The notes under the pieces: generated by a model
Told to the model about the DNA's origin: nothing
Databases searched by the model: none
The model's input: only the letters and a program-made list of their open reading frames with translations
Shown: positions 11,770 to 64,000 of the stretch, piece after piece
Layout: every line of letters begins with the position of its first letter
How positions within the stretch are numbered: position 1 is the stretch's first letter
Program-made: the position numbers and the translations under genes
Assembly: GCF_003704095.1 (NCBI RefSeq)
Contig: NW_020846122.1
Coordinates: forward strand, 310,001 to 374,000
DNA: 64,000 bases
DNA from: Pocillopora damicornis
Taxonomy: Eukaryota
Reading direction: 5' to 3'

Positions 11770-11803
<34 letters not shown>

Positions 11804-24777: not shown

Positions 24778-25037
24778 AGAGCATTTGTGTGTTGTAACAA
24801 TGATACCGGTCAGGCGCTGAAGTCATACAAGCGAAACCAGCCTTCCTTTTAACCAACACCAATACTTCGCTTCACCATTGCAATTTTCAATCCACGTTAG
24901 AAACAAAAAGCCAGTGTTATGGTCAAATTTCGCTGAAACGCGACACGATTTTCGATTCTCTCGAATTAACTCCCGCGCTCGAATCCACAGTAAAAGCATT
25001 ACGTAAGTTTCGAGTTATTTTTAAATCGTGACAATTG

Positions 25038-25064
25038 TTTTATAAATTCAACCAATCAGGGCGG
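25038..25064 (-). promoter_or_regulatory. Candidate core promoter of the GAIN-domain gene (GC box, CCAAT, TATAAAA)
   Basis: GGGCGG 25059-25064, CCAAT 25052-25056 and minus-strand TATAAAA 25044-25038, about 260 nt upstream of ATG 24777. Confidence 0.4.
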
Positions 25065-41158: not shown

Positions 41159-44100
41159 ATGTTTGACTCAAGGCAAGGTAATTTGCGGCTGTCGAGTTCG
41201 CTCGCTTTTTTGCTCCTCATTTCCTCTGTTGCTGGTGGCGGCGTGGCACCGGGATTTAAAATACAAGGTTTGTGTGTACATTATAGAGATTTTAGTGTTC
41301 AAAACCGCAGGAGAGCAAATTTAGAGCCACTGACTGCGACATTATCTACTCCTAGGGAGCCTGGCTTCGTGCACTGTTGAGAACGCAGTCATTGAGCTAC
41401 CAATTTTGGCGGGAAATCCATGTTTTGTGTGCCGATGCAAGGTTAGTGGAAGCCCTGAGTTTTTCTTTTTAAAGAATTTATAACCAGTTCGTGACATCAT
41501 TGTTCAGAGTGTTTCGATAAGAACTGCCTACAGTGACAACCTTGGCAGGAAACACAAACGCGTCTATAAAAAGGCGAGCGAAGTTTTTATAGGATTAGGA
41601 AATGGTCAAAATTGCTGTTCAAATTTCAACGTAAACATTCGGTGGGAGGAAGGCAAAGACACTTATTTACTTTTCAGATGGAGGAAAAATTATCACTGAT
41701 AGCTGATGGAGCTGATGATGGCTCATTCCGTCTAGTCCTAGTAAAATCATTGGCTACAGACGCGTGCAAATATTTGGAATATGTCCATAGAACGCACCAT
41801 CACTTGTCCAATTTGTCTACCACCGTGCACACTAATTGAACATAAGTGAAGTAACACTCGCACGCGGTTTAGTTTTTGTGTATATGCTTTATTTAGATAA
41901 ATCAGCAAGCTAAATAAAGAACGGGGCTCGCGTATCTAAACAGAAAATTCGACAGCTTGGGATAGTTTGTAAGTGGGAGAGATAACAAAGAAAAAAAGTA
42001 ACTAAGAGAGTCGAGAACTGATCAACTCGTGTTCATCTTATCGGGAAGGGGTCGAGATTGAAATCATCATAAGCTCGTCAACAACAATTTACTCTTGAAC
42101 TGTTTCGTGGTTGAATAGCTTCCCTTGTTATTTGAAGTAAATTGCTTTCCGTTTGCTATGCGAAAAACGTCAACTTCACAAAAGTACACTTTAGCCTGTC
42201 CGTTAAATGACAATAGGCAAAGAGTAGAATCATTAACGCACTTGAGAATCACTCAGGCTACTACTAATGGCACAACAAACAACAAGTGCTTTTTCCACTT
42301 TTGATTCAGCTGGTTCGTGTTCAAATATATTACCGAGGAATACGGAATTTGTTTCTACAAAGACGAAGACACGATGCGATTAGCGGGAAAACACCAAGTC
42401 ACGTACACTTTAGGCGATATTGCAAATGCCTTCCTTGGGTTGGGGTTAAAATAAAAGGTTATAAGTTCTCATCTGTATTTCTTCCTCTGTATCACATGTG
42501 TTCTCGCTAGCGGTCAACTTTTTCCTAGGTTAGGAATTCCTAATATACACATATCTGAATGATTTCGAGTTGATGGATTTTCTAGTGGTGGGCATAAATT
42601 TTTTGAACAGCCTCGCCCGTTCCTCTAATCCGTCACTATTTGAAAACAAATTTCTTACCTTCGTGAGCAGAATGAGTATCTTGTAGCAGTTTTGAACTGA
42701 AAAAAAATCAGTCGCAATAGTTCCTTAGACTATTAATCCGAAAAATGTGCTTTGAGTTTCATTCTCACCTCAACACGTTGTGATTGACGAATTACGAAAT
42801 ACATGCCTGAATATAATTAGGAGATTTGGGTGAAAAAATTATTTCAGTTGTTACTCTTGCCGTACGAACACATTTCGAGGTTGCGTCTCAACTACGAGAA
42901 TGCCTCCAAAACGAAGGGAAAATTCCATTCAATACGAAAGCGAGAGGTTGGGTGTTTTCGTACTAAAGGGTTCAGTTATTTGAAGAATGCGAAACTTCAG
43001 CTATAAAAAGTGAAATTGAAAGACATGGCTGATAAAACAATCAATCTGATAAATAACTGACACTAGAAGCCTAAAACGAACATAGCAGACACGTTTGATG
43101 GCTAAATTACTCCAAACCGCGACTTTAAAAATCAGTTTTGGCACGAAGGTAACTGTCTTTCACAAATCAGTCGAAAATCCACTGATGAAATGATGGACAT
43201 AAAAGCCGGTTTCAGTTCTCCTTCTTTCCCGTCCTGAGTTTCCAATACCTTTTTAATCATTTTAGCCTTTTTTTAATTACCTACACGTAGCTTCAGTCGT
43301 TGCTCCAGACAGAAAAATAAATTAACTGTACTTCACCTGAAGAGAACACGATATAATTTAATTTTGACAGTGTAATTCATAACTGAGTTGCTTTCATCCA
43401 TCTTTTCATTCAAGTCAAAAGTGATTGATTGGCACATTTCCGAAGGATTACTCTAGGAATGATTGGCAATTTTTAACGTCGTCTGTTTCTCGTTTCTTCT
43501 TTAAGATACAGCGAGAAATCACATGCAAGATAGTTATCACACCCTTTCCTTCCTAAGATTTGACATTCTGATATCCTTTCGTGTATTTTGAGTCACAAGT
43601 CACTGGTATTTGTTATGTTCTCCTCTTTATTAACGTCAGCGGCAACAAGATTAGAAACATTTGCATTGATAAGATGATAAGTTTTCTCAGTGCTGTATCT
43701 TTTATCAGTCTACGACTCAATAACAGGCTTTGGCATGCTAATACAAAAATCCAATTTAACCTCCCATGTTATTGCTTAAGATAATTTGCATAACTAAAAT
43801 TGTATCAAATATTTTCTTCTCATGAAATCGCATGCAGAAATATCCAAAAACACGTGGATTTATCCCAAAGAAGCGAGTTGTGAGCCGATCTCACCTAACC
43901 GTCAACTATAACACGAAAAAAGTGTTAAATTTCTTTCATTATTTCCATCTTTTTGCCTTAAAACGGATTCCCAAGATGTTTTTTAATAAAAAGAGAAGGA
44001 ATCTGACCCAGAAACAGTCACACAAGATAAAAACAGTGTTTGTTTAACCAAGTGACTTTTCGTGCAATTCTTACGTCAAAGAATCTTCCACACCTCATCG

Positions 44101-47100
44101 TGGCCACGGAGACAGAAAGTGAAAAGGGTTTTGAACCCAAATACGGAAAATATCTGTGTATCAATAAAAAAAAATGTTATGGTAACACAGATTGCAACGG
44201 AAAAAAAAAAACAAATCTTTTTGAACACCGCAGAAGAAAATCGTGATCCGTCGAAGTTAACTTTCATGTGGTTCGATGTCACTCATCACATCAAAGAGGT
44301 ACCCACAAGCAAATAAAGAAAATCTCAACGGTCTTCCTTTAAAAGAACGTCGTGTTAACGTAGTCAGGTTCTTTCTCAAGCATTCGTTTATTTTTCCTGT
44401 TATCTTATGAGTAACCTTCCAAGCGTTTTAAACCTATGGAATTTGTCCCCTAGAGACTTTTATTAACCCTAAGTTACCACTGTAACATAAAATAAAAGCC
44501 CAAATTATGGGTTCTGCCATGACGGTTTCTGTGATGGAAGAATTTAACGATTGTTGGCAAAAATTAAAATTGAAATCATTAAAAAACCTTCAACTTAGAA
44601 ATATCATGTTGAATGCAGTTTAGTCATCCAATATGACGAAGTGAGGAATCATTACTTTAACACGCTTAGATCCTTTAATTTTGGTCGAATTACCACAGTT
44701 TAAAATAGCCAGTGAATTAAAAAAAAGCCATCAGAAAATTAGCTTATATTTCCCACGAGAAAATAAATGGGAAAAATTTTATCCTTCTATCTTAAAGTAA
44801 TCCGTGTAAGAGACTACAAAAAATGAAGTAATCAAATTATGTAACACTATGTGGTACCGTTTATTGACTTGCATTAAGAATCTATCGTGCACAGCATGAC
44901 AGTATAAGTCAAGTGCTTCGATGTGGCGCTTTTTCCTCCCTTGCAAGGGATCGTCATAAGCCCCACAGGGTCGCCCTTAATAGTTCAAAGTACTGCAGAG
45001 AGGTTTTGATACGTAAAGACAAGCTCAGAATATCTTACTATTTAAGTGCTTGGCTATGTTGCTGTTTTGTACACGTTTGTTATTTTTTCATCAGTCGAAG
45101 ACACTTTCCAGTATAAAGGGAGATTTTTGAAAATGCAAGTTCTTTAAACGTTGACTCGGATGGCTTATAGGTGCGGCCTGTAGTTCATAATTCATCAAGC
45201 GTTAGGACGCCATGATTAAATATAATTTTCCAGAGTTGGTCTCTCTTCGTTACGTTCGATAGACACTAAAACCGTTATCTATCCAAGTGCTTCGATTACT
45301 TCACCACTAAAAATCGTTCGTTTCATTGTAGGAAATTGCAATGTCTAAGTTCGATGACATACAACCCAAATAAGACCTGTAGAAGTAGTAGAAGAAGAAG
45401 TACAAAATGATTTCGACTAAAACGTATCAAATCTTCGTGCCGTGTCAGTAGGGTAGCTCTTCCGTTTCAAAACGCTGATATTTTATCTTGAGAATGATTA
45501 CTAGTGCTTATAAGGACTACATAGTAAGCCCCCTTGTGACTACAATTAACAGCAAGGATATCGCAAGAGACTTCAAATTATTTGGATCATTACATGCCTG
45601 TGGTTTACTTATTATAATGGTGGTATGAGAGTTTAAGCCGAGGAGAAAAACAGCTGATGGGTCAATAGCATTTACGCAAAAGACGTTTCCTTTAGGGGGA
45701 GCCTTTCTTTTAGCCTGTCTGTAAACATGAAACAAGATACGGGTGTGTATAACCTCTTATGCCGCTGCAGAGTGGCATCAGCAATCGCACTATCGTTGAA
45801 AAACAAGCAACTAATCGCTATAATCTTGGCACTTGTTCACTTTGTTGGGGGCCTTTTCTCTGTTTGATGTGTCACGTATTATCATCAATTCTGTGAGACA
45901 TATCGATATTGCCCCAAGGGTGGTATTAAAATTCAGACAAAATAACATTAAGTACTTCAATTTATTTACCTCGAATTCCGTGCTGCACGCATTATTCACA
46001 TAACTTAACAAGTACGTTGTAGTGCTCAGGAAATCCAGTCAAGATCATTTGCCAATTGTCATTGCTTAATACCTCGCGGGAAATGTTTTTCAGGAAACAA
46101 TTATATTTGCTGATCAGAAAGATATTTCGATTCACAAATACAAAAAAGGAAAGATAGATAAGATCTCTGAGCTAAAGACCACAACCTCCTTGGAATCTCT
46201 TTCTCTGTCAAGTTCTCCAAAAAGATACCGTTGCAGCAATAAGTCAAACAGATAATAAAGGAAGTAGAAAATATTTCTCCATCGGTTAAGTGGGAGTCAG
46301 ACCCCAACTGACTGCGATCCTTGACAGTATAAACTGATTAATTGTGCCACAGGCGCCCTTCATTCTTAGATGAAGTGACATACCAATTCAGACTTGATAT
46401 ATTTGAAAAAATTCAACAGTTGTTTAGTCTCCTATTTCTGATCTGAACGAACTGAAACCCAAGATCCTTAGGCTAACAAACTCCAAACATCTACCACATT
46501 AAACAGGTAAAAACCGAGATTTGGCAAACAACCATAAAATAAGTGTCACAAGACAACTCTGTAGGTTATATTGCCCTCTTATTTTAGTCAGCTATCATGC
46601 CTTTCTCCCAATCCTTCCCTTCCCCCCGCCCCTCGGGAAAAGACATATCAAAATAGCTTTGTCAGTATATTAAGAGTCAACTTGTAGAAAACATTCAAAC
46701 CATTCCTCTAGTAATGGAAAGAAACTTAAGGAAGTGGATTCTGACGGACGTTTGACGAACATTTAACACCCATGGAGAAATCAATATAGAAATTCTAGGC
46801 GTGAATCGAGAACTTAATAAGGAACAACTAAGCATCGACCAATTATAGATCAGTTATCAATTNNNNNNNNNNNNNNNNNNNNNNNNNNNNNNNNNNNNNN
46901 NNNNNNNNNNNNNNNNNNNNNNNNNNNNNNNNNNNNNNNNNNNNNNNNNNNNNNNNNNNNNNGTCAAATATTTCCCAAACGATCTGATGATTACATTTCC
47001 ATTTTGGTTTCATTTGAACAGCTAGTCAGAGGTGAAAAATTCAGCTATGTCTTCCTGTATTGATCTTTTGTTCCTCAGTGCAATGCGTATGCGTCCTTGC

Positions 47101-50100
47101 ACCTTTTTAAAAATGAATTTTTTTCACAGCTTCACACATGTATGGACTGGCCAATTGATTTTCGTCCGGAAATACTTGTAGATAATATTGGCAGTGTTGT
47201 GAAGCAGCCAACGACTAGCATGAAAATCTTGGTTTGGAGAGAATTAGCAACCGTGACAAATGCCATGGGAGCTTTCTTGACATTGACATTTCTATAAACT
47301 CAAGCACTTTCGACAAGGATGATATCACATTAGACTTTCCACTCGTTTTTAACTTTCTCACTAGCGCTTAAATTATTACGAATAGTTTACTGCGAGATAC
47401 AAGTCAAGGAGAACAAGCGCACAATTTATAATTTGAGTCGTGTAATTTCAGCACGAGTAAATCTATTATAGCACCGCCTCAAGGGAAATTTTCACGATAT
47501 TTTTTATTTGTTCTCTTCTATGGGCAAACTGATCCTTAACGCTATGGAAACCAATAAAAAAATATTTTGTAAGACAAAAAAAGCAGTAGAGTTGAATTAG
47601 TGACTAGACAACGAGCTAGGATCGCTAGGGGTGCAGAAGATTGACATGGATTAAACAGCCGATTCAAAAAATTCAAGCCAGATTTTCAGGATCCATAAAC
47701 AGCTACACAGCTGCTGTAATTTCAATGTCATTTTCGACAACCTGATGCTACTCTATACTCTCGTGTGAATCAGTTTCTTCCTTTTTCTTTTCACTCTTGT
47801 AAAATGATGGGCGGCATTTAAAAGCAATGTGAGCAGCCGCATAACCGATTCAGTAACCATCATCCTTTATCTTTAACAGATAATCTTAGCTAACATTCTA
47901 ATGATGCCACAAAAATTAGTAAGGATTTCTTATTTATGGCATCATTCATGTCGTTTCAATTCTTATCTTGACCAAACGATCCAGCTTTAATTGGTTTTGT
48001 TGAATAAGCGTGCCATAAACGAGATTACAAAGGGCATATATTTAAAACGTAAAGGGTGGCGTGCTGTGCTAACGATCCTAGGACACGAGAACCCAAACTT
48101 CTCTCCCTTCCCGACTTTCGCATCTTAATTAAGGAAAGGTACTTCTGGAGAGTAAAGTTTTATATATTGTGGCTGTTGCTTCTGACAAAAAAAAAAACCA
48201 AAGATGTTATTTGACGTTTTTGCAAAGCGAAAAACAAATGACTCCAAAGAAAACTTTTATTAATAATGAACAGCAAAGGGTCAACATAAACAGAACAAGA
48301 ATAGGTAAACAGAAGTTTATGCTAGATTGCAATCTGACAAGATTGATAAATTAAGCTTTCTTAAGGCTTAAGCGGTGTCTGGATAAGACTGGGTAACAAA
48401 CTCAAAACAGTCTTGAGTCAAAACTTAACGCTTTGCCATAGAGATTATTGAACGTTGTGAGCTTAAATTCAACGCAAGATCCACGGTGAAATATATAATG
48501 ACATTCAGATGTTGTGAAAAGTACTATGTAGTTCATCTAGCGGTCCCTTAGTGATACTAATATCCTAGATCTCAGAATATAACACTTATCCCGGAAACAA
48601 GAAGATCTGGTATACATCAAGGATATCTAAAAGTATATGAGAGTATTATGTGAGCGATCTTTTCAAACATTTTTCATCTTTTTTAGAACAAATCTGTGGA
48701 ATGTTCGCGCGAGGTCTGTCCAAGGACGAACGCATGCAAGGGAACTCTGAAGAGAGAGAAAGGCAAATGCTGTCCCGTTTGCAATGAAAACCAAGGTAAT
48801 AATCCTCCGCGTAAGAAATAAAGAACTTTCGTCACTTTGGGTGTTCATGTTGATCATTAGAAGAAAATTTCAACACAGCATCTGCAAGGAATCTGTGCGC
48901 CTCTGTCTCACCGCTAATCAGATACAGACTTAGGACAAAAAGAAAAGAAAGAATTGTAAACTAAGATAGTCAGGCCACCATGAAGATGTCAAGATAAAGA
49001 AAAATTTCGAGAAGACATCGTTAATTGTTTCCATAAATTTTCATTTAAGTGCTCTTAGTTCGAAAGTGCTCTAGAGCCCACGGAGTAGAAAAGCAAGGCA
49101 AGGTGATGTGCTTTAAATGAATCTTACCGGGCAGTATTAAAATTTGAATTTGGCAGCGGAAACTCAATGATCAATGCGCCCTGTCAGAAAAGGAGAATAC
49201 GTGGAGTTCTAAACCCGGATTATTAAATTTGAAATTATAGTCCATAAGAAAATATTTGTTTTCAACAAATCTTTGTTAAGAAAACACTAAGAAAAAAGCT
49301 TGAGACATGCGAACCACTTTGGACAGCTCCTTCTCCAAGTCCTTATTTTCACGATTCAGTTTTCGTTCATGGTGTTTTCCTTTTCAAGGTTTTGTTTATC
49401 TATTTACTTATTCATTTTTGTTGGGTCTTCCTCTGCGGCACTAAAGGATATAAAAGAAGAGCCGCGTTCGGTAACCTCGACCGAGGTCTTCACAGGTCTT
49501 CTTTCGCTTGCGACACAGTTCACTTCGTTTCCAGCAAATTCTTTGAACTCTAGCATCCAATACTAATGATGCAACTTATCATATGCAACTTATAAATATA
49601 TATATATATTTTATTATTTTTCTAATGAATCTTTTGATTGGAAAGACCTGAAAATTTGCTCCTAAAAAACCTTTGTTCTAACCCACTTTCGAGAAAGTTT
49701 CGCAAATTAAAGTTACATTTGAACCTAAATAACCCTCGCGTTTGACCGGACTTTGGAATGAACTGCTCAATTCAAACATTTGATTGTTTATTCTTAATCA
49801 TGGTTAAATATGCGTTTGTTTGTCAGTATTTAGCCCGAACAAATATTTGTTTAGATATTCAATCAGCGCGGCTGTCCAATTGAAATCGTATCATAAAACC
49901 CGCTTTGCAAGCTTTCTTTAAGCGTAAACAGAAGAAACATCAAATATGTCTCCTTTAATCTAAAACACCTACTTGGCAATTCCGATCCTCTTGAAATGAA
50001 ACCATAATAGCCTTTTGTTAAAACAAATCATTTCTTGTGCCGACATGGGGTCGGCTAGAGCGATTAAATGTGCTTGCGGAGAGGTGTTTGATCCTACCGC

Positions 50101-53100: not shown

Positions 53101-56100
53101 AAATGGAACTGTCTCATGCCAGCTTCAAAAATGCAGCCCAAAAAATTCACTTAGATGCCCGGAGGTAGGTACTGTTCTTAAAAAAGGAAAGTCCGTTGTC
53201 ATCAGCTATGTTCCATTTTTTCCTCAAATGTAATGTTTGACCAGCTTTTACTAGTTTGCGTTTTCGTGGGCAAATATACAACAAAACAAACACACTGAGT
53301 ATTTTCATTTCCTGGCATGAGATCATTTTATGAATGCCTTTCTCTGTTAAAAGAGGGGGTGTTTCTCAGGAGTAATAGAGTCTCCTGTGGCCTAAAATAA
53401 GTACTAATTTAAAACGATGAAGCAGCCAAATATGCCCTTGAATTCTACAAAATGCCTGTGTACGACCCCCCCCCCCAAACAATACCAATGCAGGCTCTTA
53501 AATTGCCATGATAATAGAATACTGATATGCTTGCTGAGAAAAGAGAGCTTCAAAAATCATAAAAATGCTTCTGTCCACTCTCTTATTTACTTTTAATTGA
53601 TTTGTTTATTTGTTTTCTTAAGGGCAAGGCACCAGGTCTGGTTCCAGGGGCTTGCTGCCTTCAATGTGTAGAGAGTGAGTAATGGTGGAGTTTTTTATTG
53701 TGGTGAATTAATGGCTGTAAATATATGAAAATCATATATATGAGCTGCGGATAAAGACGTGAATATGAAAGCAATCTTCAAAGTAATGAACTCTACTCAG
53801 GCAGAAGTGAAAATAAGCCCTAAAAATTTTATTCACCACTTCATGGGTTTATTTGGAACTAACATAAGGACCAGCTCCCAGTTGGCTTGTTAGCTCAGTT
53901 GGTAGAGCACTGAACTGGTATTGCAGAGGTCATGGGTTCAAATCCTGTACAAGCCTGAATTTTTTCAGGCCTTATTTTCACTACTGCTTAAGTAGTGTTC
54001 ATTACTGTGAAGATCGCATCCATATTCATTACTTTATCCCCAGTTCATTTATATGATTTTCATATATTTATAAAGCAAATTATTGATACAGCAACTATTT
54101 ACACTGCAAAGGGTTTGAACATGGCAGTAACATGTGACTGTGTAGTTTAATACTCTGGCTGAGAGTAGTCCTGAGGAGCACTGTTGTTGGTAGTAGTAGT
54201 GACCGACATTTTAACAACTTGAGCAGAAGTCATCATCAGAGTGAGGTGAAGGGTTGTTGTTGGTCAAATGTACAAAGTCTAGATTAAGTGAATTGATTGG
54301 AGTGAATTAATTGGTCAGTACAGCAGACTTTATGATCCCAACACCATATCTCACACAATGTGATGAGTATCTCTACCTGCACAACATTTCCTTATAAATT
54401 TGGCAGAGAGTTTTTTTTGTCTATCAAAAAAACACCCTTCTCAATTTAAGATTCTTTCATCTATTGATTATATATTTATTTGCTGTTTATTTCCAAGAAT
54501 TTGTTTTTTTTTTCATTTGGGAAATTTGCCTCGCTTTTCAAACTTCTCATAACTTGTTTGCCTAATAACTTAAGGCATTTGTATTAAGTAATTACATTTG
54601 ATCACTTCTAGGGGTGGAATATTTAATCATATTTGAGATTTTTCAGTTTGACAAGGAATGATAAACCTTGAATGGTGTGCATGAAAGACAATTTTTTCAA
54701 CTATAACCAGCTTCAACTCTTTAACTTCCAAAAGTGATTAACGAGCAACTTCTCCCAATCATACCAGTACATTATTCCGCAAAAAGGCAATGAGAATACC
54801 TCAACTTATCAGGTAGAGTTTGTTTTCTTGATCGAACACTAAATTCTCGCAACAATTTTAGGAGGAAATGTTTTAGAAGCTAGAGGGGAGAGTTAACAAT
54901 CAGATCTTAGGAGTTGAAGGGTTAACGAACTATAGGAAGTCTCACATACCTCTCGCTACCGTTATTGTCAATCTATCATGGTTTAAACTATTTTCTTTAT
55001 CAAATAGCACTTTTTCAGCAATATTTTGAATAGGATACCCAATATCTATTCAGTAGTCTTACCCGCGAAAGCACAACCAATGATACCAGCTTCGAGGCGA
55101 ATTCCAATTTCTCGGTTTTGAGGCGTTGAAACGTCCCCTGTTGATTTACCAGCTTTTGTGCACCGAAATACTGTTTCTCCGTGAACTGCCCGTTCGATTT
55201 GACAGGACATTTTACCAGAAGTTCGAAAAGTCATCACCCATTGCCGCCATTTTGTTTTTTCTCACAACAGCCATAAATGGACATAATGCCAATCCACTCG
55301 CCAAATATGGAAACTATCAAAAAACACCAAAGGGGGTGGGTTGGGGTGGAACTGTTTCAATCTTGTTTTTCATCTCTATTGCCACTACGGAAAAAGTAAA
55401 AAACTGGAAGATCATGATAAAAGAAAGGCAAGATGAATTCAATAAAACCAATCCAAAAGCAAAAATTGAAAGAAAGAATATATTTTCATTTCCTTGTTTA
55501 TCGGGAATACTTCGTTGCATTTCAAGAGTGCAGTTGTTCGTAGAGTTTTAAAAGTGTTCGACTGCACCTGTTTTGGCAGATATGTGATCCTTCTTCCAAC
55601 TCCACAGGGACTCCACAGAAAGCTCACTAAATCTTGGTTGCTCAATAAAAAATTAACTCAAAAAGCTCGCTCGTAGGACTCTCGTGGCGTCCTCTGCATC
55701 TTCGAGAAGACTCTTGCGTTTACCGGGAATACTCCGTTGCATTTCAAAAGTATAGTAATGATCCTCTAAGCGCTTCAAACTCCAATGAACACAGACACAT
55801 TCCCTTCATTTGATCAGGCTCGCAGACACGCTGTAGACCGGGGCCAAACACCATCTGCTCCGCCGCTGACCTTTCCTACACCTTGCGCACGTGCATTAGA
55901 CGTCTGAGGGCGATTTGCAACAGGAAGGAACTGAAACCTTCTCATTTTAATACTCAGGCTCTCCTGTGGACGCCCGAGAAAAAAAGGAAATAAAAAGGAG
56001 AAGCAAAAATTAAAAGAAAAATAATCCATACCTGGTGTAAATTGCATCAGAATACAGCTTGGCTCTCTTTGATCATATGTTTCCCCGCTGGCCATAGAAG

Positions 56101-57452
56101 CCCCAAAAGCTATTCGAGAGGAGTTGCTCGCAGTCTAAACTTCTTGAATTGAAACTAAATTATTTTTTAAACAGCTGTAGGCTTTCTTCATAACTTGTTT
56201 GTTGGTTTGCCTTTTTAGAGACTGGTGTTTGTACATCGTATGGAGACCCACATTATCGAACATTCGATGGTCAAATGTTCAACTTTCATGGCACTTGTCG
56301 ATACCAACTCACGTCAGACAACGCAAACTTTACCATACGCATGCGTAATGATCGGCGATACACCAAAGTCTACGCTTGGTCCAAGGCCTTGGCGATCCAT
56401 TTGGTTGACTCCTCGATTGTTTTACATAAGGACCTGCAAGTGAAAGTGAATAAGTCGGATGTGAAGCTACCATACTATCATCTGCCTTATTTTCAGATAA
56501 CGAAGGGTAGTTTTACCATAACCCTTGTGTCCAACATGGGAGTTCAGGTCCAGTGGGATGGTAAGGGTTTCATTGAGATAAGAGTGCCGAAGAGTCTTAT
56601 GGGTAAAGTCGACGGGCTGTGTGGGAATTTCAACGGTAACTCAAAAGACGACTTTAATCTGAAAAACGGCAGGCGCGCTACGTCCGCTCAAGAATTTGGA
56701 GAAAGTTGGTCATTGGGTCGAAGAAATCACGGGTGCAAGAAAGCCCCTTCAGAACCAGTGAAGTCAACGATGTCACAATGTCGTTTGCGGAGACTCATTA
56801 GTGGTCGTAAACGATGCTCTGTTATCAAGAAGCAGTTTGCAAACTGTCACGGAAAGGTGAAGCCGGACGCATATTACTCGTCGTGCGTTTCGGCGGTCTG
56901 TCAGTGTACAGGAAGGCGGTGCGAATGTGACGCTGTTCTGGCTTACAAAAACAAGTGTAAAAGCGAAGGAATCACAGTGAACTGGGGCAGGAATTGGAAA
57001 ACTTATTGTGGTAAGTGTTAGAGTACTTTTCACGCTAGTAGAGCTATATGGGTTTATACGGTTCGCGTAATGACATACCAGACAAAACCTTAGGTACTCG
57101 CAAATGCTATCCTAAGACAGGTGCACAAAAATAAATGAGATAGCACTTTGCACTCACTGCACGACATTTATCAAAAAGAAATTCCAAGATAAATTTTGAG
57201 TTACTGTTTTCCTGCTTGTAAGGAGTCTCTTGCGCTGTCAAAGGCGCCGTCTTTGATGACTGTGCTCCTGCCTGTCAGCGGACGTGCGACAACAAGGATG
57301 ACGTAAGTGTTCCGTGTCCCAGCAGCTCTTGCGTGCCTGGTTGTCTGTGTCCGGTGGGAACTGTATGGAACAGTCAAAGGACAAAATGTATTCATCCGGA
57401 GAAATGCCCTCCACAGGTGAGATGGCTGCGGGGAAGATGTGCTTATAAGTAA
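41159..57452 (+). CDS. BMPER: BMP-binding endothelial regulator / Crossveinless-2-like secreted protein (SP-vWC-vWD-C8-TIL, about 443 aa)
   Basis: Exons 41159-41267 (signal peptide), 52365-52402, 53054-53164, 53623-53674 (one vWC: CTHQGRTYKHNDSWFAKECKICFCTNGTVSC...CCLQC), 56219-57010 (KTGVCTSYGDPHYRTFDG; GLCGNFNGNSKDD; C8) and 57223-57452 (TIL). All phases match. The CCxxCxEKxGVCxxxGDPHY junction is typical of BMPER/Cv2. The 3' end might instead splice at CAG|gtgaga 57416. Confidence 0.85.
50456..50503. repeat. 24-bp perfect tandem duplication
   Basis: attactcaacttaattcagtgtct twice. Confidence 0.9.
50775..50789 (+). promoter_or_regulatory. BMP-responsive Smad element GGCGCC-N5-GTCT in intron 1 of BMPER-like gene
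   Basis: Exact GGCGCC TCTTG GTCT, matching the GRCGNC(N5)GTCT Mad/Smad1-Medea/Smad4 composite site. Confidence 0.55.
52431..52630. mobile_element. piggyBac-like MITE copy in BMPER intron 2
   Basis: Ends aaagggttaa; homologous to 8548-8759. Confidence 0.6.
53718..54070. mobile_element. Composite repeat: about 110-bp terminal inverted repeats enclosing a tRNA-like cloverleaf
   Basis: The left arm taaatatatgaaaatcatata...gtgaaaataagccctaaaaa is the imperfect reverse complement of the right arm ending catatattta. Confidence 0.8.
53884..53956 (+). pseudogene. tRNA-Thr(GGT)-like cloverleaf, probably repeat-borne rather than a functional tRNA
   Basis: GGCTTGT/ACAAGCC acceptor stem, GCTC/GAGC D stem, loop CTGGTAT and TTCAAAT T loop; A-G mismatch in the anticodon stem. 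GGT is an atypical eukaryotic Thr anticodon, and the cloverleaf sits inside a TIR element. Confidence 0.6.
54134..54270 (-). mobile_element. Second repeat family with a decayed hammerhead-like core
   Basis: Minus strand reads ctCTGATGAtgacttctgctcaagttgttAAAAtGTCggtcac; the GAAA box appears lost through CpG-type transitions. Confidence 0.4.
54712..54925. mobile_element. piggyBac-like MITE copy in BMPER intron 4
   Basis: tcaactctttaact...gagttgaagggttaa termini. Confidence 0.6.
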
Positions 57453-60400
57453 ACAATCTGATGTCGCAAAAGAACTTGCAAACACACCAAAACCTTTCGG
57501 CAAATCTCTCTATTTGCTTCGCAGAAGAAAACACAACAAGTCCTTAATCTGAAACATTCTCCAAGAAAAGAACGATAGCATCTTTTTCTCACCTCCTCGA
57601 AAAATTCTGTTTTGCATCCGAAGTTTTAACGCCTTTGATGTTATTTAAACATACTAGGTGCTTTTCGAAAAAAAGCTACCGTGAATCATATCACTTTGAA
57701 TTTCGTAGACTCTTCCACCGTCAAAGAATTGTTAATGCTCCGTATTACACCACTGGTACTCAAATTTCTAAATATAGAAAGCAGCATTTACCACCGCTCA
57801 GTGAAAAAACATCGAAATGAAACTTTCAATCAGTGCCTTGTCTAAAGAATCAGACACATTGAGACAAATGAACAATTACTAGAACGGAGAAATTGATAAA
57901 GGTCACGCAGTTGGTGGTGCAAAGTGCTGTGTGGCAACGATGATGAAGGCGCCTATGCCGTAGAAAGCATTTATCATTTTCACTACCCTACGTTATGACG
58001 CGAGTGTGTTATCAGCTTCAAAAGACTTTTTCTATCTGATGAAGTTTGCCTTCAAAGTAGCATACATCGTCACTTTCAAATCTGGCTTGGCAGCCTGATC
58101 GCTTATCTTCGACGTAACAACGTTTCACTCCTCTTTTCCCTTAAAGGTGGCCGGCCCTGTCACTGTGTTGTTTTCAAAATGGCGGCTTCCCTGATCGAAT
58201 TTCTGACACATCTGAAGACATTTTTTCTAATCGTAAGCTTACCATTTAGAATCTCAGAACACCTTGATCAATTGACTTCAATATACAACGTTAAATGGCG
58301 GAGATAAAAATTTAATGCTTTTTTCAAATCTACGTCTCTATTAACAATGATAAAGTTACACATATTTCACTAGCCTTCGTCTAACCTTTTGTTGTAACTT
58401 GAAAATCCAACAGCTGTCGTCCATTCAGGGTAAACTACGAAGAGCGGCTGTGAGTTTGAAGAGGAGTCACAAGTGGATGATCAGACAACTGAAGAATAAC
58501 GATGGAAGATAAAGATAGTTTTAGCCGACAACATTTGCATTCAATAACTCATATATGAACCAGCTGGTCAGTACTTCGATGAAACACGTGTATGCGCGCG
58601 CATAGTCGCAAGGATTCGTCCAATTCATATGACAGGAGAGAAAGGAGAGATGGACGGTTTCCATTGACTGCTCAGCAGCAACAATAACTTTACAAATTAC
58701 ACCCATGGACTGTGAAGCTATCAACGAGACCATACATATGTAACGAAGTCTATGGTTTCACAAATAGTTTTAATCTTACACATCGCTATCAGTTGCGTAG
58801 CATTAGTCATCACACGCGCGTATCGAACTAATATATATTTTTTATCTCAAAGGATATATATTTTCTCACCGAAACCTGAGTGGTGGATATCAAATCATCC
58901 ATAGAAGAACTCCCTTTAGAACTACCCCTCCCCCTAACTCAACATTAACCCTAACTTGTTACACTTGACTGTTGTTCAGTTAGGGGAGGGGTAGGTGCGA
59001 AGTTTCTTTGATACTGACATTGCTTAATGTTGACATTCGAAACCTCGTCATATCTGTAATAATCCTATAAATGACAACGTATATTATTTATGAATCTTTA
59101 AATTGTCTTACTCATCTGTTGCATCAGGAACCAATAACTATTAACCCGTGGTCTCAAAGAATACCTTACAAATATTTTTACCAAATAAGACTGAAATTTT
59201 CCTTAGACTTTTAACAGTGTCATGTAAGCATTTGCCCTGGTTTCAACTAAAGTACAACCCAAAATTTGAATGTAATTTTTAGTGAAAAGTTTACCACATA
59301 AAATTTTTTCCACTTATTAAGGAACCAAGCCTTATACTAAAGAAAGGCTGGGGTCATTTCAAAAGGGATCACAATATGAAATCACTTGGAAAACCTTGTC
59401 ATTATATCCTCTTAAAACTGGAATTAAGATCGATGGTATTTAATTCTTAGTTTAAAAACTGTAAAGGGTTGATTTCATACCTATTTGATGATTCCATGTA
59501 AAAAAAAATTGTAATTGAATTGTATAAACGTCCAATTTTACGTGTAACGCTCTTTTCTCAGGAAGTGAAGTTTAGCATAGGAGTTACGTTTCTACCTCTT
59601 TACGTTTCGTGGTGTCCATGTCTTAATTAACTGAAAAGGCATTTAATTTAACACACTCACGAGGCCATACAAACTGACGACTACGTAAAATAGGTGAATT
59701 AATTCACCGTAGTAAGTTTTGATCATGACCGGTTTTTTTAGCAAACAAGGTAATAAAGTTTCGCTAATAAAACGAGAGCGCTTTTCAATTGAATGTATTG
59801 TGTAGTAAAATCTCGACCAAAGTTATCACAGTGGCTAATCAGACGATAACTCATAACAAACAGCTGATGAGAATTCCAGATCAATTTAAGGAACCCATTC
59901 AAAGCGCGAGAAAACGTGAGAGGCCAAGCCGCCATTAGTTTTGGTGTTACACTTGATTGGTCGAGGAAGCGGCAAGAGTTTTCTGAACCAGTTATAACTC
60001 TCTTGCGGTCAGGTGTTCATTTGAGGCGTGGGCAGTGGCGAAGTAGTGTGAATGTGAGACGCTATAGTAAAACCACCTTTTTTCAACTCGTTGATGATGT
60101 AAATTTGAAAAAAAAAGTCGCTTTGCTCGTAATCTTTTATTTTTAATTTGGACGCAAAATTGCTCATCAACCTCAACTCTCGGGGCGAATAATGGCTAAA
60201 TCAAACATGGTGGTCTAATCCACTATGACACAGTCCACATAAGAATTCTTAACGGCTGAATATGAGAATTTTGTCTTCTTGCTTAAGTTAAAAAGTAGCA
60301 GGATGATAGTTGTGGTATTCTGACGAGCTCTCCTGTCCGAGTCTTATTTTACAACATTCTACAACTTTAAATTACAGATCACTGATTCTTCAGTCCATAT

Positions 60401-61313
60401 ACAATATTGTACACTCCTCCATTCGGAGTCTAAGCTTTACATTAAATAACGTTACGCAAGAAAAAACGAGGAATGAGGGCACAGAGAACAATTAGGGCGT
60501 TACCTGGGATGTGTCCACTCCATTAAAGATACATTAGGTCAAGTGTAAATCTACTTGCTTGCTATCTCAAATAGAACGCTTGAATTCTTCCCTAAAAAAG
60601 ATCATTTCTCTTCCTTTCCAATGTCGTTTCCATTGTTTAAAATAATCGCCCCGTTTTTTGCCGTCGGGTCAAGACTTCATGCGATACACCAAGTGTCCAT
60701 TCAAGGGACTATCTATAAAAAATTATTCATCCTAGTGCCTAGATCAGGAGATTTTACCGTTGTCCGTTCATTTTCTCCTGCTTCTTCGGACTAGGATAGT
60801 AAAATACATCGTGATCTTTTACTTATTTGTAAACAGTAACATTACATTACCATCAAATACTGAGCTTATCTAAAGAAAAATCAGTTATTGATGGGAATCA
60901 ACTTTCGCTGCGTACGCTCAGCTTACATCATCATCACCACTCGCCCCTGGATAAATTGAGCCCTACCTGCTAAGCAGGCCATGTACGAATGAGATCAAGA
61001 AAAAAAAAGTTAAGTCACGGGATACCAAAAAGATGTTTTCCAACGATAAAGGGTACGTTGTACTTTACAAACATGTAATCCTGAACGTAAAATTATTGGT
61101 TGTACATCAAATCTTTAAATACTTAAAGGAGGCACCCACATAAGATTGCTTCTTGTTTAATTTTGCGTGACAAACTCAAGGAGACTGTACAAAGAGTGTT
61201 TTGCCACGTGTGTATCATACATGTTGGTGTGACATGTTGTGGAGCGGACTTGCTGTGACAATGACAGGAGTGACCAACATGCGTTGTGTGACCATCAGAG
61301 GCCAGTGATTGCG

Positions 61314-63617
61314 CTACAATGCTCTTTCGTGATCTTCAGGTAAACCATTCGCCAAGGACGCAGCACCAATTCCTTTCAACACCATACTTTCTTCATCAGA
61401 TCCGGGAGTAACCAGTAGTCTCTTGTTCAAATCTGGCGGAGGTTTCCGTGAGTGATTGAGTTGCGGTAATCGAGGTGGCACCTTCCCGCCACTCGACACA
61501 GACTCCGTGTCGGAGATCTCAGACGAACGGTCGCTGTCTAACGTGGAGGATGCGGATGAACCATCTGGAAACAAAGCAAATAATCGTCAGTAAGTCTGGT
61601 ATCGAGCCCAGAGGCACACGAGGCTAAAGCTTTACCCTTGGTTGCGTGGGATAAACTGACTACTGCTCGGGATATCGGGTGCTTGTGCTTGGCCCCTAGT
61701 GGGCCCGCCAACATGCGCGTAGGTCTATCAAATAGGAAGACAAACAATTTTTTTTACCCAGTAAAGCCATAAGTTCAACCTACGTTGCAAAAAAGGTAAG
61801 GCGTGGAACAATTGACTCGAACCCGCCGTTATTTTGAGATCATTTCCGTTATACGATGTACTCACTATCTGTTCGTTAGAAAGTGAATTAAAATTGTGAA
61901 AAGAAATGAAAATCTCATCTGTTGCGTTTTATACCTGTCTCATCTTCTTCCTCCTGCATCTCGCTGAGCGGTTCTAGCGGTGTGACCGCTTTCTGTTGTT
62001 GCTGCTGTACAAGGGGTTCGCCCGTTTGCGATGATAGAGATAAATCCAGCTTGCCGCCCTTATTGAGCCTGTCACACATCAGCGCAATGTGTTTCTTTAG
62101 CTTGCTTGTATCTTTAGGAATCTTCATGGCTGAAACACCAACTGTAGGCAGAGTCAAAGAACACTGAGCGAGATTTGTACACACGGTTGGTGCAAGTTTT
62201 TTCCAAAAAAATTCCAAACCTCTTTTTTTTTTTTTTCCAAAAAATTATTTCAACGTTCAGACTCATTAAATCAGAGACAATTTAAAATTAAACGGAGGTA
62301 CTAACCAGCCTGATCCTTTGCACTTTTTGCCAAACAGGTCCGCAATAGGTGCGTAATTGCAGCATCTGTAATTTCCTCCCAGCCCTGAACACAAGGAAAG
62401 ACACAGAATTACATAAGCGATGTATTTCAACAATCTGAAACAGCAAATTACAGATGTAACTTGTTTACCACCGTTACAAGAAAGAGTACTAGTGACACTG
62501 TTTACGTTCACCGAAACGAATTGAAAATGAATTGGAGGGAGGAGGAGAGGTGAATCCCCGAAGCAAGGAAGACTCCTGGAAATTAGCTGATATTTCATGA
62601 TAAGCTGACTTAAACACGCGTTTTGAGTGGTTCTTACCCATGATGCATTGGAGGGCAGACGCATAGATGACGTCACCATTAACAACCTTTTCTTTTTTAT
62701 TATTGAAAACAAATTGATTCCATGTTGCGGTGGCTCGAGACTATAAAAGATCGCAAAAAAAGTCAAAATGTGGTAAGAACATCAGCGACACACACAGCTG
62801 CGCCTAGTGTGCTAAATTTTCGGTCTTACCACATTTTAACGTCATTTGTGATCTATTACTAAACAGACGCACGGAAACATGGAATCTATTTGTTTAATGG
62901 AAACCAGATACACGACTTGAAATTGGCAGTAGTCGCTTTTTACGTTCGTTTTATCCTCTTGCTTTTTGCTTTTAGTTTGTGTCTGCTTTGTTGTATCGTT
63001 TTGATTTGTTTTTAACAACTCCGTTAATCCCACATAATTATTAAAAAGTTTGCGAGAATTATGAATGCTATAAAATTATCAAAGCTTATCTTTTCAGTTC
63101 CCTTTTTCATTTTCTTGTTCTTTTTTTTAAAGGATGTCACCTGACATTTCAAACTACGGATGCGAAGAAGACGAGTGATTTAAAAATTGCCAGAGAGGGA
63201 AAACCACATAATGTTCGCGACAAAAATTTGTCTCCTGTTGTTGTTCCTTTATGTGTATGTGTCTTTTCTTTTTTAACCGAATATATTTTGTACTTAAATC
63301 ACGCCATGAAACTGATACCTCACTTTTGTAAAATATTAGGAGCCTGTAGCTCGCATAAGTCTCTTGGTTTCCCTACTGGTTTCCTCGCTCCATGCTAAAT
63401 CTTCAGGTATATCATATTAATGTAAATGTAATTCCTCTGTTATTTTCACCGATGTATCATAATTAAAAAATGACAAAATAAAGAACAAACAATAAGAAAA
63501 TAATAATAAAATAAAAAAATACGATTGTAAAATACCTGTTCCCGTGATTCAGATACTTCGGGAGAAAGCGCAGTCTGAAGAACCTCAAAATCTTTATCTG
63601 ACATGTTGGTCCAAAGC
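61314..63617 (-). CDS. BBS9: Bardet-Biedl syndrome 9 protein (PTHB1), last four coding exons; gene continues beyond the window end
   Basis: Exons 63617-63536 (LWTNMSDKDFEVLQTALSPEVSESREQ), 62384-62306 (GWEEITDAAITHLLRTCLAKSAKDQA), 62141-61935 (MKIPKDTSKLKKHIALMCDRLNKGGKL) and 61564-61314 (stop). These match the PTHB1 C-terminus as I recall it (GWEETVDAAISHLLKTCLSKS..IPKDTSQLKKHITLLCDRLSKGGRL). Confidence 0.92.
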
Positions 63618-64000
63618 CTGTGGAGTAATTAAAAAAGATGAAAACAGATGACGTGAACAAATTCCTATATGGCGTGACATATGATGCCAGCATGGCGTAA
63701 CATGGCATAAAGTTGCGTTCGATCCTCATACGGAATGTCACGCAAAGAATACACAGACCTTGCCTAAAACACATCGTTCAGAGCCACATCCAAGTGCGAA
63801 AAATTCAACTCGCTAACGCGAAGTGGAGTGTTTCTTTTAAACCCGCTCGAGAAAAATTCTTTCACGTTTTCTTACATATTCTCTGGTGTCGTTAAGAGCA
63901 ACTTTCAAGCGAGCGTCAGAGGTAATAAGGGACTGCCTTGTTTTTTTCTTCGCGTCACTGTGCGTCCAGAAAACTTGCGCCACTTTTTAATCCAATCAGA

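What the first reader, a model, noticed from the sequence alone, without database searches (positions are those of the whole stretch)
41159..64000. BMPER-BBS9 neighbourhood shared with human: possible ancient microsynteny or genomic regulatory block
Seen: a BMPER/Cv2-like gene ends about 3.9 kb from the BBS9 stop codon, tail to tail. Established: human BBS9 and BMPER are neighbouring genes on 7p14.3 (same orientation there, as I recall). Inference: the linkage has been kept since the cnidarian-bilaterian ancestor, with a local inversion. This supports orthology and may reflect BMPER enhancers residing in BBS9 (bystander-gene model).
Basis: partly seen in the sequence, partly recalled or inferred. 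Interest (0 to 1): 0.75.

Follow-up and report, generated by a model that had tools for sequence, protein, structure and literature searches.

The report
Ancient BMPER-BBS9 gene neighbourhood in coral
In this stony-coral genome the BMP regulator gene BMPER/Crossveinless-2 and the cilium gene BBS9 lie end to end, the same pair that are neighbours in vertebrates (where BMPER's switches sit inside BBS9) and lie close together in the fruit fly, so the neighbourhood is probably older than the split between corals and bilateral animals.

Summary
On the + strand there is a 9-exon BMPER/CV2-like gene (ATG 41159, stop 58510-58512). It encodes a signal peptide, 2 VWC, VWD, C8 and TIL. On the - strand lies single-copy BBS9.

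RNA contigs show one more BBS9 coding exon than the open frame at 61915 suggests; the true stop is at 61314-61316. The stops are 2.8 kb apart, and mRNA 3' ends are only about 0.3-0.4 kb apart. The N gap lies in intron 2, and no coding sequence is missing there.

Orthology to BMPER/CV2 is supported:
- by named best hits;
- by a reciprocal best hit in this genome;
- by a starred clade that excludes every mucin- or FCGBP-type row;
- by a VWC1 match to solved Crossveinless-2 VWC1.

KCP and vertebrate BMPER were not in the tree.

The linkage recurs in another coral contig, with the same tail-to-tail order. In Drosophila, both genes are in the 20-gene interval 57D4-57E1. Papers report it in vertebrates. 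An ancient microsynteny is therefore likely (about 0.8).

The regulatory-block explanation is established only in vertebrates. In coral, the conserved non-coding blocks I found lie in BMPER's own intron 3. I found no printed mention of the pair beyond vertebrates; supplementary lists were closed.

The parts
41159..41269 (+). BMPER/CV2-like exon 1 (start codon, signal-peptide-like hydrophobic N-terminus)
   Evidence: tblastn of P0037 and P0168; boundary +-3 nt
41357..41441 (+). BMPER-like exon 2 (first half of VWC1)
   Evidence: GT follows 41441
46863..46962 (.). assembly gap (N) inside intron 2; no coding sequence missing
48687..48797 (+). BMPER-like exon 3 (second half of VWC1)
   Evidence: 100% identical to P0168
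49805..50068 (.). conserved non-coding block in intron 3 (67-68% identity to two other corals)
   Evidence: blastn against L008 and L010
50359..50420 (.). second conserved non-coding block in intron 3 (78-79% identity)
50775..50789 (+). BMP-response-element-like motif GGCGCC-N5-GTCT, kept at the collinear place in two other corals
   Evidence: (1 match, 0.01 expected)
52364..52402 (+). BMPER-like exon 4 (start of VWC2)
53051..53164 (+). BMPER-like exon 5 (VWC2)
53620..53673 (+). BMPER-like exon 6 (end of VWC2)
56218..57012 (+). BMPER-like exon 7 (VWD with GDPH, C8)
57222..57412 (+). BMPER-like exon 8 (TIL)
   Evidence: RNA joint 57412>58410 in 4 of 4 runs (the cut can lie up to 4 nt further on)
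58411..58512 (+). BMPER-like exon 9 coding part (basic tail, TAA at 58510-58512)
58513..59790 (+). BMPER-like 3' UTR; end is approximate (contig ends at 59731; AATAAA at 59752 and 59766)
58930..59004 (.). short repeat inside the UTR region where RNA contigs break (depth spike, loose ends)
   Evidence: tables 2 and 7
60087..61313 (-). BBS9 3' UTR (contigs begin at 60087, 60108 and 60181; AATAAA on the - strand at 60141-60136); in run X1 the contig runs on to 58931
61314..61564 (-). BBS9 last coding exon (Ser/acidic-rich tail, stop at 61314-61316), kept in coral L008 at 78% identity
61935..62141 (-). BBS9 penultimate exon (end of PTHB1_CtH)
62306..62387 (-). BBS9 exon (PTHB1_CtH positions 23-49)
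63539..63621 (-). next BBS9 exon upstream (low-coordinate edge from the RNA loose end; high-coordinate edge not determined; conserved in L008)

Best explanation
The window holds the coral orthologues of BMPER/Crossveinless-2 and of BBS9. The BMPER form is reduced: signal peptide, 2 VWC, VWD, C8, TIL and a basic tail. The two genes are transcribed towards each other, and their mRNA 3' ends lie about 0.3-0.4 kb apart. I read the adjacency as inherited from the common ancestor of cnidarians and bilaterians, that is, as an ancient microsyntenic pair. The same two genes are neighbours in another stony coral and in vertebrates, and lie in one small interval in Drosophila. One gene was inverted relative to the other somewhere along the way. 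The most likely reason for the retention is that the cis-regulatory landscape of BMPER, a dosage-sensitive developmental regulator, overlaps the neighbouring, broadly needed BBS9. Breaks between them are then selected against. That overlap is shown experimentally only in vertebrates. In coral, the near absence of untranscribed DNA between the two genes also leaves almost no place for a harmless break. Shown here: both gene models, their orientation and distance, BMPER-clade membership, and the linkage in a second coral. Taken from papers: the fly and vertebrate linkage, and the vertebrate enhancers. Inferred: ancestry of the linkage (about 0.8), and regulatory constraint as its cause (about 0.4 for the coral lineage). 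The confidence given for this explanation as a whole is 0.6.
For: Gene models come, with RNA joints in 4 of 4 runs from 4 studies. Orthology: the best non-cnidarian hits of P0037 are named BMPER or cv-2 (Owenia unnamed; Mizuhopecten, Dermacentor, Mytilus, Mya, Antedon, Hydra, Helicoverpa, Coccinella, Bugula). The scallop BMPER-like P0175 hits this VWD exon best in the whole assembly, 194.6 bits against 103.4 for the next locus. In a 62-row tree, a clade with support 97/87* holds all 13 anthozoan rows, Hydra BMPER, 12 further named or BMPER-like rows and 2 unlabelled rows, and none of the 20 multi-VWD rows. VWC1 matches solved Crossveinless-2 VWC1 chains 2mbk and 3bk3 at E 1e-6. Linkage: contig L008 (75% identity in the VWD exon) carries BMPER-like exons on + and the last three BBS9 exons on -, with stops about 4.2 kb apart. 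In Drosophila, CG15666 = BBS9 and cv-2 = CG15671 = BMPER are both among the 20 genes listed for 57D4-57E1, written '...dom, CG15666, CG9822, CG17974, cv-2'. The order NPSR1-BMPER-BBS9-NT5C3A holds in human, Xenopus and axolotl, and the synteny is stated for mammals to zebrafish. For the mechanism in vertebrates, there are enhancers in BBS9 introns and one TAD, and a pig deletion in BBS9 that lowers BMPER expression. Transphyletic conserved elements are assigned to Bmper in deuterostomes.
Against: The orientation differs from vertebrates. In the fly, two genes appear to lie between the pair. No other 7p14 neighbour was found on this contig: UMPH-1/NT5C3A gave no hit, and Dpy19 lies on other contigs. 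The genes flanking the pair are unrelated: a MANEC/GAIN gene, C-type lectins and a BTB-BACK gene. In coral, no non-exonic block is conserved between window 57000-64000 and L008. The conserved blocks that I did find lie in BMPER's own intron. The coral protein has 2 VWC where Owenia has 5 and Hydra and Mizuhopecten have 4 detected. No vertebrate BMPER or KCP sequence was in the tree.
Confidence: 0.6

Rival explanations
1. The linkage is ancestral but kept passively. Scleractinian genomes rearrange slowly, and the two genes are packed so tightly (3' ends 0.3-0.4 kb apart) that few breaks can fall between them. In coral, BBS9 carries no BMPER regulatory elements, and the vertebrate regulatory block is a later elaboration.
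For: All 2.8 kb between the stops is transcribed. No conserved non-exonic block was found in the compared 3' part of BBS9. Conserved blocks and the BRE-like motif lie inside BMPER intron 3. Coral BBS9 is compact, with about 18.9 kb of coding span.
Against: Drosophila has a strongly rearranged genome, yet it still has both genes in one 20-gene interval. The orientation changed between lineages, so breaks next to the pair did happen without separating it. Only about 1.5 kb of BBS9 intron could be compared.
Confidence: 0.35
2. The adjacency arose independently, by chance or convergence, in coral, fly and vertebrates and says nothing about the ancestor.
For: The orientation differs, the fly has intervening genes, and no extended synteny was found.
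Against: My own rough estimate, not a tool result: with random gene order, the chance that a given pair is adjacent in a genome of about 25,000 genes is near 1e-4. The chance that it falls within one 20-gene interval in the fly is near 1e-3. Even over several thousand human neighbour pairs, fewer than one such triple coincidence is expected. The arrangement is also kept between two coral families.
Confidence: 0.1
3. The + strand gene is not the BMPER orthologue but a cnidarian VWC-VWD protein closer to kielin/KCP or to mucin/FCGBP-type proteins, so the shared neighbourhood is only apparent.
For: It has only 2 VWC. The word search could not see proteins longer than 922 aa, so KCP-sized proteins were excluded. 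The unrestricted search was swamped by multi-VWD giants. The PDB and Atlas best hits for the VWD exon alone are FCGBP, VWF and mucins.
Against: A starred BMPER clade excludes all 20 multi-VWD rows and the mucin-like rows. It is the reciprocal best hit. VWC1 matches Crossveinless-2 VWC1 best. The architecture order VWC-VWD-C8-TIL with one VWD equals BMPER. No second single-VWD candidate locus appeared in the assembly.
Confidence: 0.07

Closest known systems
Vertebrate BBS9-BMPER regulatory domain (human 7p14.3; craniosynostosis risk locus)
   Same: It is the same two orthologous genes as direct neighbours. In vertebrates, BMPER enhancers lie in BBS9 introns and in the intergenic DNA, and both genes share one TAD. 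A pig deletion within BBS9 lowers BMPER expression.
   Different: In mammals the 3' end of BBS9 faces the 5' end of BMPER, and the domain spans hundreds of kb. Here the genes are convergent, each under 20 kb, with 3' ends 0.3-0.4 kb apart. No enhancer in coral BBS9 is shown.
Ancient metazoan microsyntenic pairs / genomic regulatory blocks (Irimia et al. 2012, PMC3514665; target gene plus bystander gene)
   Same: A developmental regulator (BMPER) stays linked to an unrelated, broadly needed gene (BBS9) across phyla, regardless of orientation.
   Different: The pair is not named in the main text of that paper (0 mentions of BMPER, BBS9, cv-2 or PTHB1). The defining conserved non-coding elements inside the bystander are not shown outside vertebrates.
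Drosophila cv-2 (CG15671) and BBS9 (CG15666) at 57D-E
   Same: Both orthologues lie in the 20-gene interval 57D4-57E1 and are written three places apart in the list. CG15666 is at 2R:21.34 Mb.
   Different: Two genes (CG9822, CG17974) appear to lie between them. I could not obtain the orientation or the position of cv-2, and that the list is in chromosomal order is my reading of it.
BMPER/Crossveinless-2 protein family
   Same: It has an N-terminal signal-like segment, a VWC1 similar to the BMP-binding VWC1 of CV2, one VWD with GDPH, C8 and TIL, and it sits in the BMPER clade.
   Different: It has only 2 VWC domains, against 5 in Owenia and 4 detected in Hydra and Mizuhopecten, and it carries a short basic C-terminal tail.

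Membership tests
BMPER / Crossveinless-2 | Single VWD followed by C8 and TIL at the C-terminal half | tested here: met
   Pfam on window exons and on P0168: VWD E 1.7e-35, C8 1.1e-14, TIL 3e-7, one stretch each
BMPER / Crossveinless-2 | Five N-terminal VWC (chordin-type cysteine-rich) domains | tested here: not met
   2 VWC stretches in P0168. Exons 2-6 of the window encode just two. Four intronless transcript contigs of other corals show the same. Owenia has 5; Hydra and Mizuhopecten have 4 detected
BMPER / Crossveinless-2 | VWC1 of the BMP-binding type | tested here: met
   Residues 34-98 of P0168 match the full length of solved Crossveinless-2 VWC1 chains 2mbk_A (E 1.3e-6) and 3bk3_C (E 2e-6). 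Binding itself was not tested
BMPER / Crossveinless-2 | Groups with BMPER/CV2 rather than mucin, FCGBP, VWF or KCP in a VWD tree | tested here: inconclusive
   The window's gene lies inside a 28-row clade (support 97/87*) with BMPER/cv-2-named rows, and all 20 multi-VWD and mucin-like rows lie outside it. No bona fide KCP and no vertebrate BMPER were available, so the BMPER-versus-KCP part is untested
BMPER / Crossveinless-2 | Reciprocal best hit within the genome | tested here: met
   P0175 (Mizuhopecten BMPER-like) hits window 56221-56991 at 194.6 bits, and the next locus at 103.4
BMPER / Crossveinless-2 | GDPH autocleavage motif in the VWD (its significance is recalled, not from a call) | tested here: met
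   The exon 7 translation reads ...CTSYGDPHYRTFDG. Cleavage was not tested
BBS9 / PTHB1 | PTHB1 domains in order (N-terminal beta-propeller, GAE, platform, hairpin, C-terminal helix bundle) | tested here: met
   PHTB1_N (6 exon hits, best E 6.9e-23), PTHB1_pf, PTHB1_hp (E 1.3e-18) and PTHB1_CtH lie collinear on the - strand of one locus only. PTHB1_GAE gave no hit at E<=0.001
BBS9 / PTHB1 | Single-copy gene | tested here: met
   All hits of four PTHB1 families in the 234-Mb assembly fall at C2757:372065-390240
Ancient microsyntenic pair / genomic regulatory block | The same two orthologues linked in several distant lineages | tested here: met
   This coral and coral L008 directly. Drosophila and vertebrates from papers. 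Other phyla were not testable
Ancient microsyntenic pair / genomic regulatory block | Conserved non-coding elements of the target gene inside the bystander gene | tested here: inconclusive
   None between window 57000-64000 and L008 apart from exons, but only about 1.5 kb of BBS9 intron was comparable. Shown in vertebrates by papers
Ancient microsyntenic pair / genomic regulatory block | Enhancer-promoter contacts or a shared chromatin domain | not testable with these tools
   No ATAC or Hi-C data were reachable for this genome

The most novel reading that the evidence does not exclude
BBS9-BMPER is a regulatory block more than 600 million years old. Already in the cnidarian-bilaterian ancestor, BMPER's cis-regulatory elements reached into or across BBS9. 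The human craniosynostosis risk landscape inside BBS9 would then be the expanded descendant of that arrangement. In corals the two convergent genes may also be coupled through overlapping 3' UTRs.
Probability: 0.25. Interest if true: 0.7.

Novelty: new member of a known kind. Interest (0 to 1): 0.5.

Why it matters
The BBS9-BMPER pair matters medically. Risk variants for sagittal craniosynostosis lie in a BBS9 intron and appear to act on BMPER, and a pig deletion in BBS9 is lethal through BMPER. If the linkage reaches back to the cnidarian-bilaterian ancestor, and survives in fly, coral and vertebrates despite changed orientation, it adds a well-defined, disease-relevant case to the ancient microsyntenic pairs. 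It also offers compact genomes in which to test whether a BMP modulator's regulation really depends on its cilium-gene neighbour: about 40 kb in coral against about 1 Mb in human. The synteny in turn supports calling the reduced 2-VWC coral protein the true BMPER/CV2 orthologue. That bears on how BMP signalling is tuned in cnidarian axis patterning.

Tried and rejected
1. The unrestricted HMMER search with the VWD-C8 exon listed almost only multi-VWD giants, whose scores are summed over many domains. It said nothing on BMPER versus KCP. It did give P0037, which served as a natural full-length query.

2. The Atlas search and the PDB search with the VWD exon alone gave FCGBP, VWF and mucin hits. 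They were uninformative for orthology, because no BMPER VWD is solved.

As a substitute I compared the 'longest_contig' lengths of BMPER-exon hits with those of BBS9-exon hits. No length was shared, which says nothing either way, since clusters show one contig only.

4. In the metagenome scan, 80 loci were kept of 159 relatives. Only 1 of the 80 (L008) held both genes. Most loci are short, are transcripts or are paralogues, so the other 79 are not evidence of absence. BBS9 fragments P0218-P0270 found nothing in these loci.

5. Extended synteny with other human 7p14 neighbours was not found. UMPH-1 gave no hit, and Dpy19 lies on contigs C279 and C2155. Flanking genes are unrelated.

6. Prior print was sought with these searches: 'BBS9, BMPER, synteny' (3 papers, vertebrate only); 'BBS9, microsynteny' (0); 'BMPER, microsynteny' (3, none on the pair); and 'BBS9 / genomic regulatory block / bystander / crossveinless / PTHB1' (no listed paper joins BBS9 with a block or bystander term). 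The main text of Irimia 2012 has 0 mentions. Supplementary tables of such surveys were closed and may list the pair.

7. I rejected the reading that BBS9 ends at 61915, because RNA joints contradict it.

8. Whether the two mRNAs really overlap is left open. One contig in run X1 spans 58931-61564, but contigs cannot show a single transcript or a strand.

Full report
**Where the window lies**

The window is G000:C2757:310001-374000, on a 496-kb contig of a 234.35-Mb assembly in 4393 contigs. The nearest named relatives of its proteins are stony corals: Stylophora pistillata, Oculina patagonica and Porites harrisoni. From recall only, the assembly size and contig number fit a Pocillopora assembly. 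A Logan transcript protein (P0168) is 99.6% identical to the VWD exon.

**The gap**

The N run at 46863-46962 lies in intron 2 of the + strand gene, between exon 2 (ends 41441) and exon 3 (starts 48687). Three kinds of sequence read from the last residues of exon 2 straight into exon 3:
- the natural proteins P0037 (Stylophora, 527 aa) and P0168 (529 aa);
- the four intronless transcript contigs of other corals, L005, L006, L007 and L009.

No coding sequence is therefore missing, and only the intron length is uncertain.

**The + strand gene**

- Pfam finds VWC at 48687-48818 and 53018-53230, VWD+C8 at 56275-57021 and TIL at 57222-57449.
- Laying P0037 and P0168 on the window gives nine exons, from ATG 41159 to TAA 58510-58512.
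- RNA contigs of 4 of 4 runs from 4 studies confirm the last intron, 57412>58410, with GT..AG ends.
- The protein has a hydrophobic N-terminus, two VWC, one VWD with GDPH, C8, TIL and a basic tail.
- Owenia has 5 VWC stretches, and Mizuhopecten and Hydra have 4 detected. The coral form is therefore reduced.

**Is it BMPER?**

For:
- The best non-cnidarian hits of P0037 carry BMPER or cv-2 names from their sources.
- The scallop BMPER-like protein P0175 finds this VWD exon as its best match in the whole assembly, at 194.6 bits. The next locus, part of a multi-VWD gene, scores 103.4.
- I built a 62-row IQ-TREE tree of the VWD-C8 region. One clade (support 97/87, starred) holds all 13 anthozoan rows, Hydra BMPER, 12 further BMPER/cv-2-type rows and two unlabelled rows.
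- None of the 20 multi-VWD rows or the mucin-like rows falls inside that clade. Cnidarian rows group together within it (86/85).
- The first VWC matches the solved Crossveinless-2 VWC1 chains 2mbk and 3bk3 over their full length, at E 1e-6.

Against or missing:
- Neither vertebrate BMPER nor bona fide KCP was in the tree.
- The word search could not see proteins over 922 aa, which excludes KCP-sized proteins.
- The unrestricted search was swamped by multi-VWD proteins.
- One pair, a spider protein that its source names kielin/chordin-like and a Mytilus coruscus protein, sits just outside the clade (92/67).

I put orthology to BMPER/CV2 at about 0.9.

**The - strand gene**

- Four PTHB1 Pfam families hit only this locus in the assembly, in collinear order on the - strand. 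They run from contig position 390240, where an open frame begins MSLFKARDWW, down to the window.
- PTHB1_GAE gave no hit.
- RNA contigs show the joints 62141>62306 and 61564>61935 in 4 of 4 runs.
- The exon 61935-62141 therefore does not run on to the stop at 61915. It is spliced to a further exon that starts at 61564.
- The phase fits. One base is left at 61935, the split codon is completed by 61564-61563, and the next codon starts at 61562, in the frame of the open frame 61317-61586 (arithmetic).
- The stop is at 61314-61316. The same last exon is present in coral contig L008 at 78% identity.

**Geometry**

- The stops are 2801 nt apart (58513-61313).
- RNA contigs cover nearly all of this. 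The neighbouring introns are empty or nearly so: 61600-61783 has depth 0 in all four runs, and 57552-58287 has depth at most 3. This speaks for spliced RNA rather than DNA carry-over.
- The BMPER-linked contig of run X5 ends at 59731, and AATAAA stands at 59752 and 59766.
- BBS9-linked contigs begin at 60087, 60108 and 60181, and AATAAA on the - strand stands at 60141-60136.
- The two 3' ends are thus about 0.3-0.4 kb apart.
- In run X1 one contig runs from BBS9 down to 58931. That would overlap the BMPER UTR, but contigs cannot prove one transcript or give a strand.

**Linkage elsewhere**

Direct evidence:
- Of the 80 metagenome loci kept, one, L008 (OMLO01000148.1, 36 kb), holds both genes. 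Its VWD exon is 75% identical to the window's, and it is nearest to the unnamed P0003 and to Oculina.
- L008 has the BMPER-like exons on + (3368 to 13110) and the last three BBS9 exons on - (18148 to 17315). It is tail to tail as here, with stops about 4.2 kb apart.
- The other 79 loci are short, transcripts or paralogues.

Evidence from papers (passages read):
- In Drosophila, CG15666 is the BBS9 homologue (PMC2375033) and lies at 2R:21.34 Mb (PMC9122502).
- cv-2 is CG15671, with BMPER as its human orthologue (PMC7973098).
- A deficiency table lists the 20 genes of 57D4-57E1, ending 'dom, CG15666, CG9822, CG17974, cv-2' (PMC4321029). The list is not alphabetical and looks positional, but the paper does not say so.
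- In vertebrates the order NPSR1-BMPER-BBS9-NT5C3A-RP9 holds in human, Xenopus and axolotl (PMC12529555).
- The synteny is stated to hold from mammals to zebrafish (bioRxiv 10.1101/2022.09.01.506150), and both genes flank a locus in notothenioid fishes (PMC9985337).

I could not test Nematostella, Hydra, placozoans, molluscs or amphioxus.

**How it most likely works**

- In vertebrates, BMPER enhancers lie in BBS9 introns and in the DNA between BBS9 and BMPER. The two genes share a TAD, and a pig deletion in BBS9 lowers BMPER expression.
- Deeply conserved candidate elements are assigned to Bmper across deuterostomes (PMC13317027).
- This is the target-plus-bystander pattern of genomic regulatory blocks, and it explains why a break between the genes would be harmful.
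- The pair survived in fly, coral and vertebrates with different orientations. That fits enhancers, which are orientation-independent, better than a shared promoter or terminator.

In coral, however, nothing yet shows elements in BBS9:
- Between window 57000-64000 and L008, only exons are conserved.
- The conserved non-coding blocks that I found (49805-50068 and 50359-50420) lie in BMPER's own intron 3.
- So does a GGCGCC-N5-GTCT motif. It occurs once in the window (0.01 expected) and once each in L008 and L010, at the collinear place.

Passive retention through tight packing and slow rearrangement therefore remains a serious rival for the coral lineage.

**Novelty**

The vertebrate regulatory domain is published. 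I found no main-text mention of the pair outside vertebrates. Supplementary lists of microsynteny surveys were closed and may contain it. I class the finding as a new member of a known kind.

**Scores**

- Interest is 0.5. It is a clean, disease-linked example, but one among hundreds of ancient microsyntenic pairs.
- Ancestral linkage is at about 0.8.
- A regulatory cause in the coral lineage is at about 0.4.
- The best explanation as a whole is at 0.6.

Noticed in passing
window 50775-50789; L008 5533-5547; L010 3790-3804: A BMP-response-element-like motif, GGCGCC-N5-GTCT, occurs once in each of three coral sequences. It sits at the collinear place in intron 3 of the BMPER-like gene, with conserved flanks. 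This suggests direct BMP/SMAD feedback on this BMP modulator.
   Followed up: partly
window 49805-50068 and 50359-50420: Two non-coding blocks in intron 3 are conserved with L008 and L010 (67-79% identity). They are candidate intronic enhancers.
   Followed up: partly
window 41159-53673 (exons 1-6): The scleractinian BMPER-like protein has 2 VWC domains. Owenia has 5, and Hydra and Mizuhopecten have 4 detected. Transcript contigs of other corals show the same short form.
   Followed up: partly
window 61314-61564 (-); L008 17315-17578: BBS9 has an extra last coding exon encoding a Ser/acidic-rich tail of about 83 aa. It is conserved at 78% identity in another coral and has no Pfam match. An open-frame reading ending at 61915 misses it.
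   Followed up: partly
window 58930-59004: A short repeat lies inside the 3' UTR region. RNA contigs of all four runs break here, with a depth spike and many loose ends.
   Followed up: no
window about 63229-63520: An interspersed repeat in a BBS9 intron has about 25 or more copies at 70-89% identity on other contigs of the assembly.
   Followed up: no
L003 2448-5117 (contig C2757:396448-399117, +): An open frame of 890 aa has no Pfam family at E<=0.01. It lies beyond BBS9, between C-type lectin exons and a BTB-BACK gene.
   Followed up: no
L003 9702 to L004 1764 (contig C2757:403702-405764, +): A gene has an N-terminal MGGSTS start, BTB (2 stretches) and BACK domains. It is not a known 7p14 neighbour, as far as I can tell.
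   Followed up: no
tree: A spider protein that its source names kielin/chordin-like (P0182) and a Mytilus coruscus protein (P0190) form a starred pair just outside the BMPER clade. They may be a second BMPER-like paralogue in protostomes.
   Followed up: no
window 13246-27000 (-): The upstream neighbour on the - strand has MANEC/KIAA0319_N-type domains and a 2123-aa open exon without Pfam hits. Other findings of this scan cover it.
   Followed up: no
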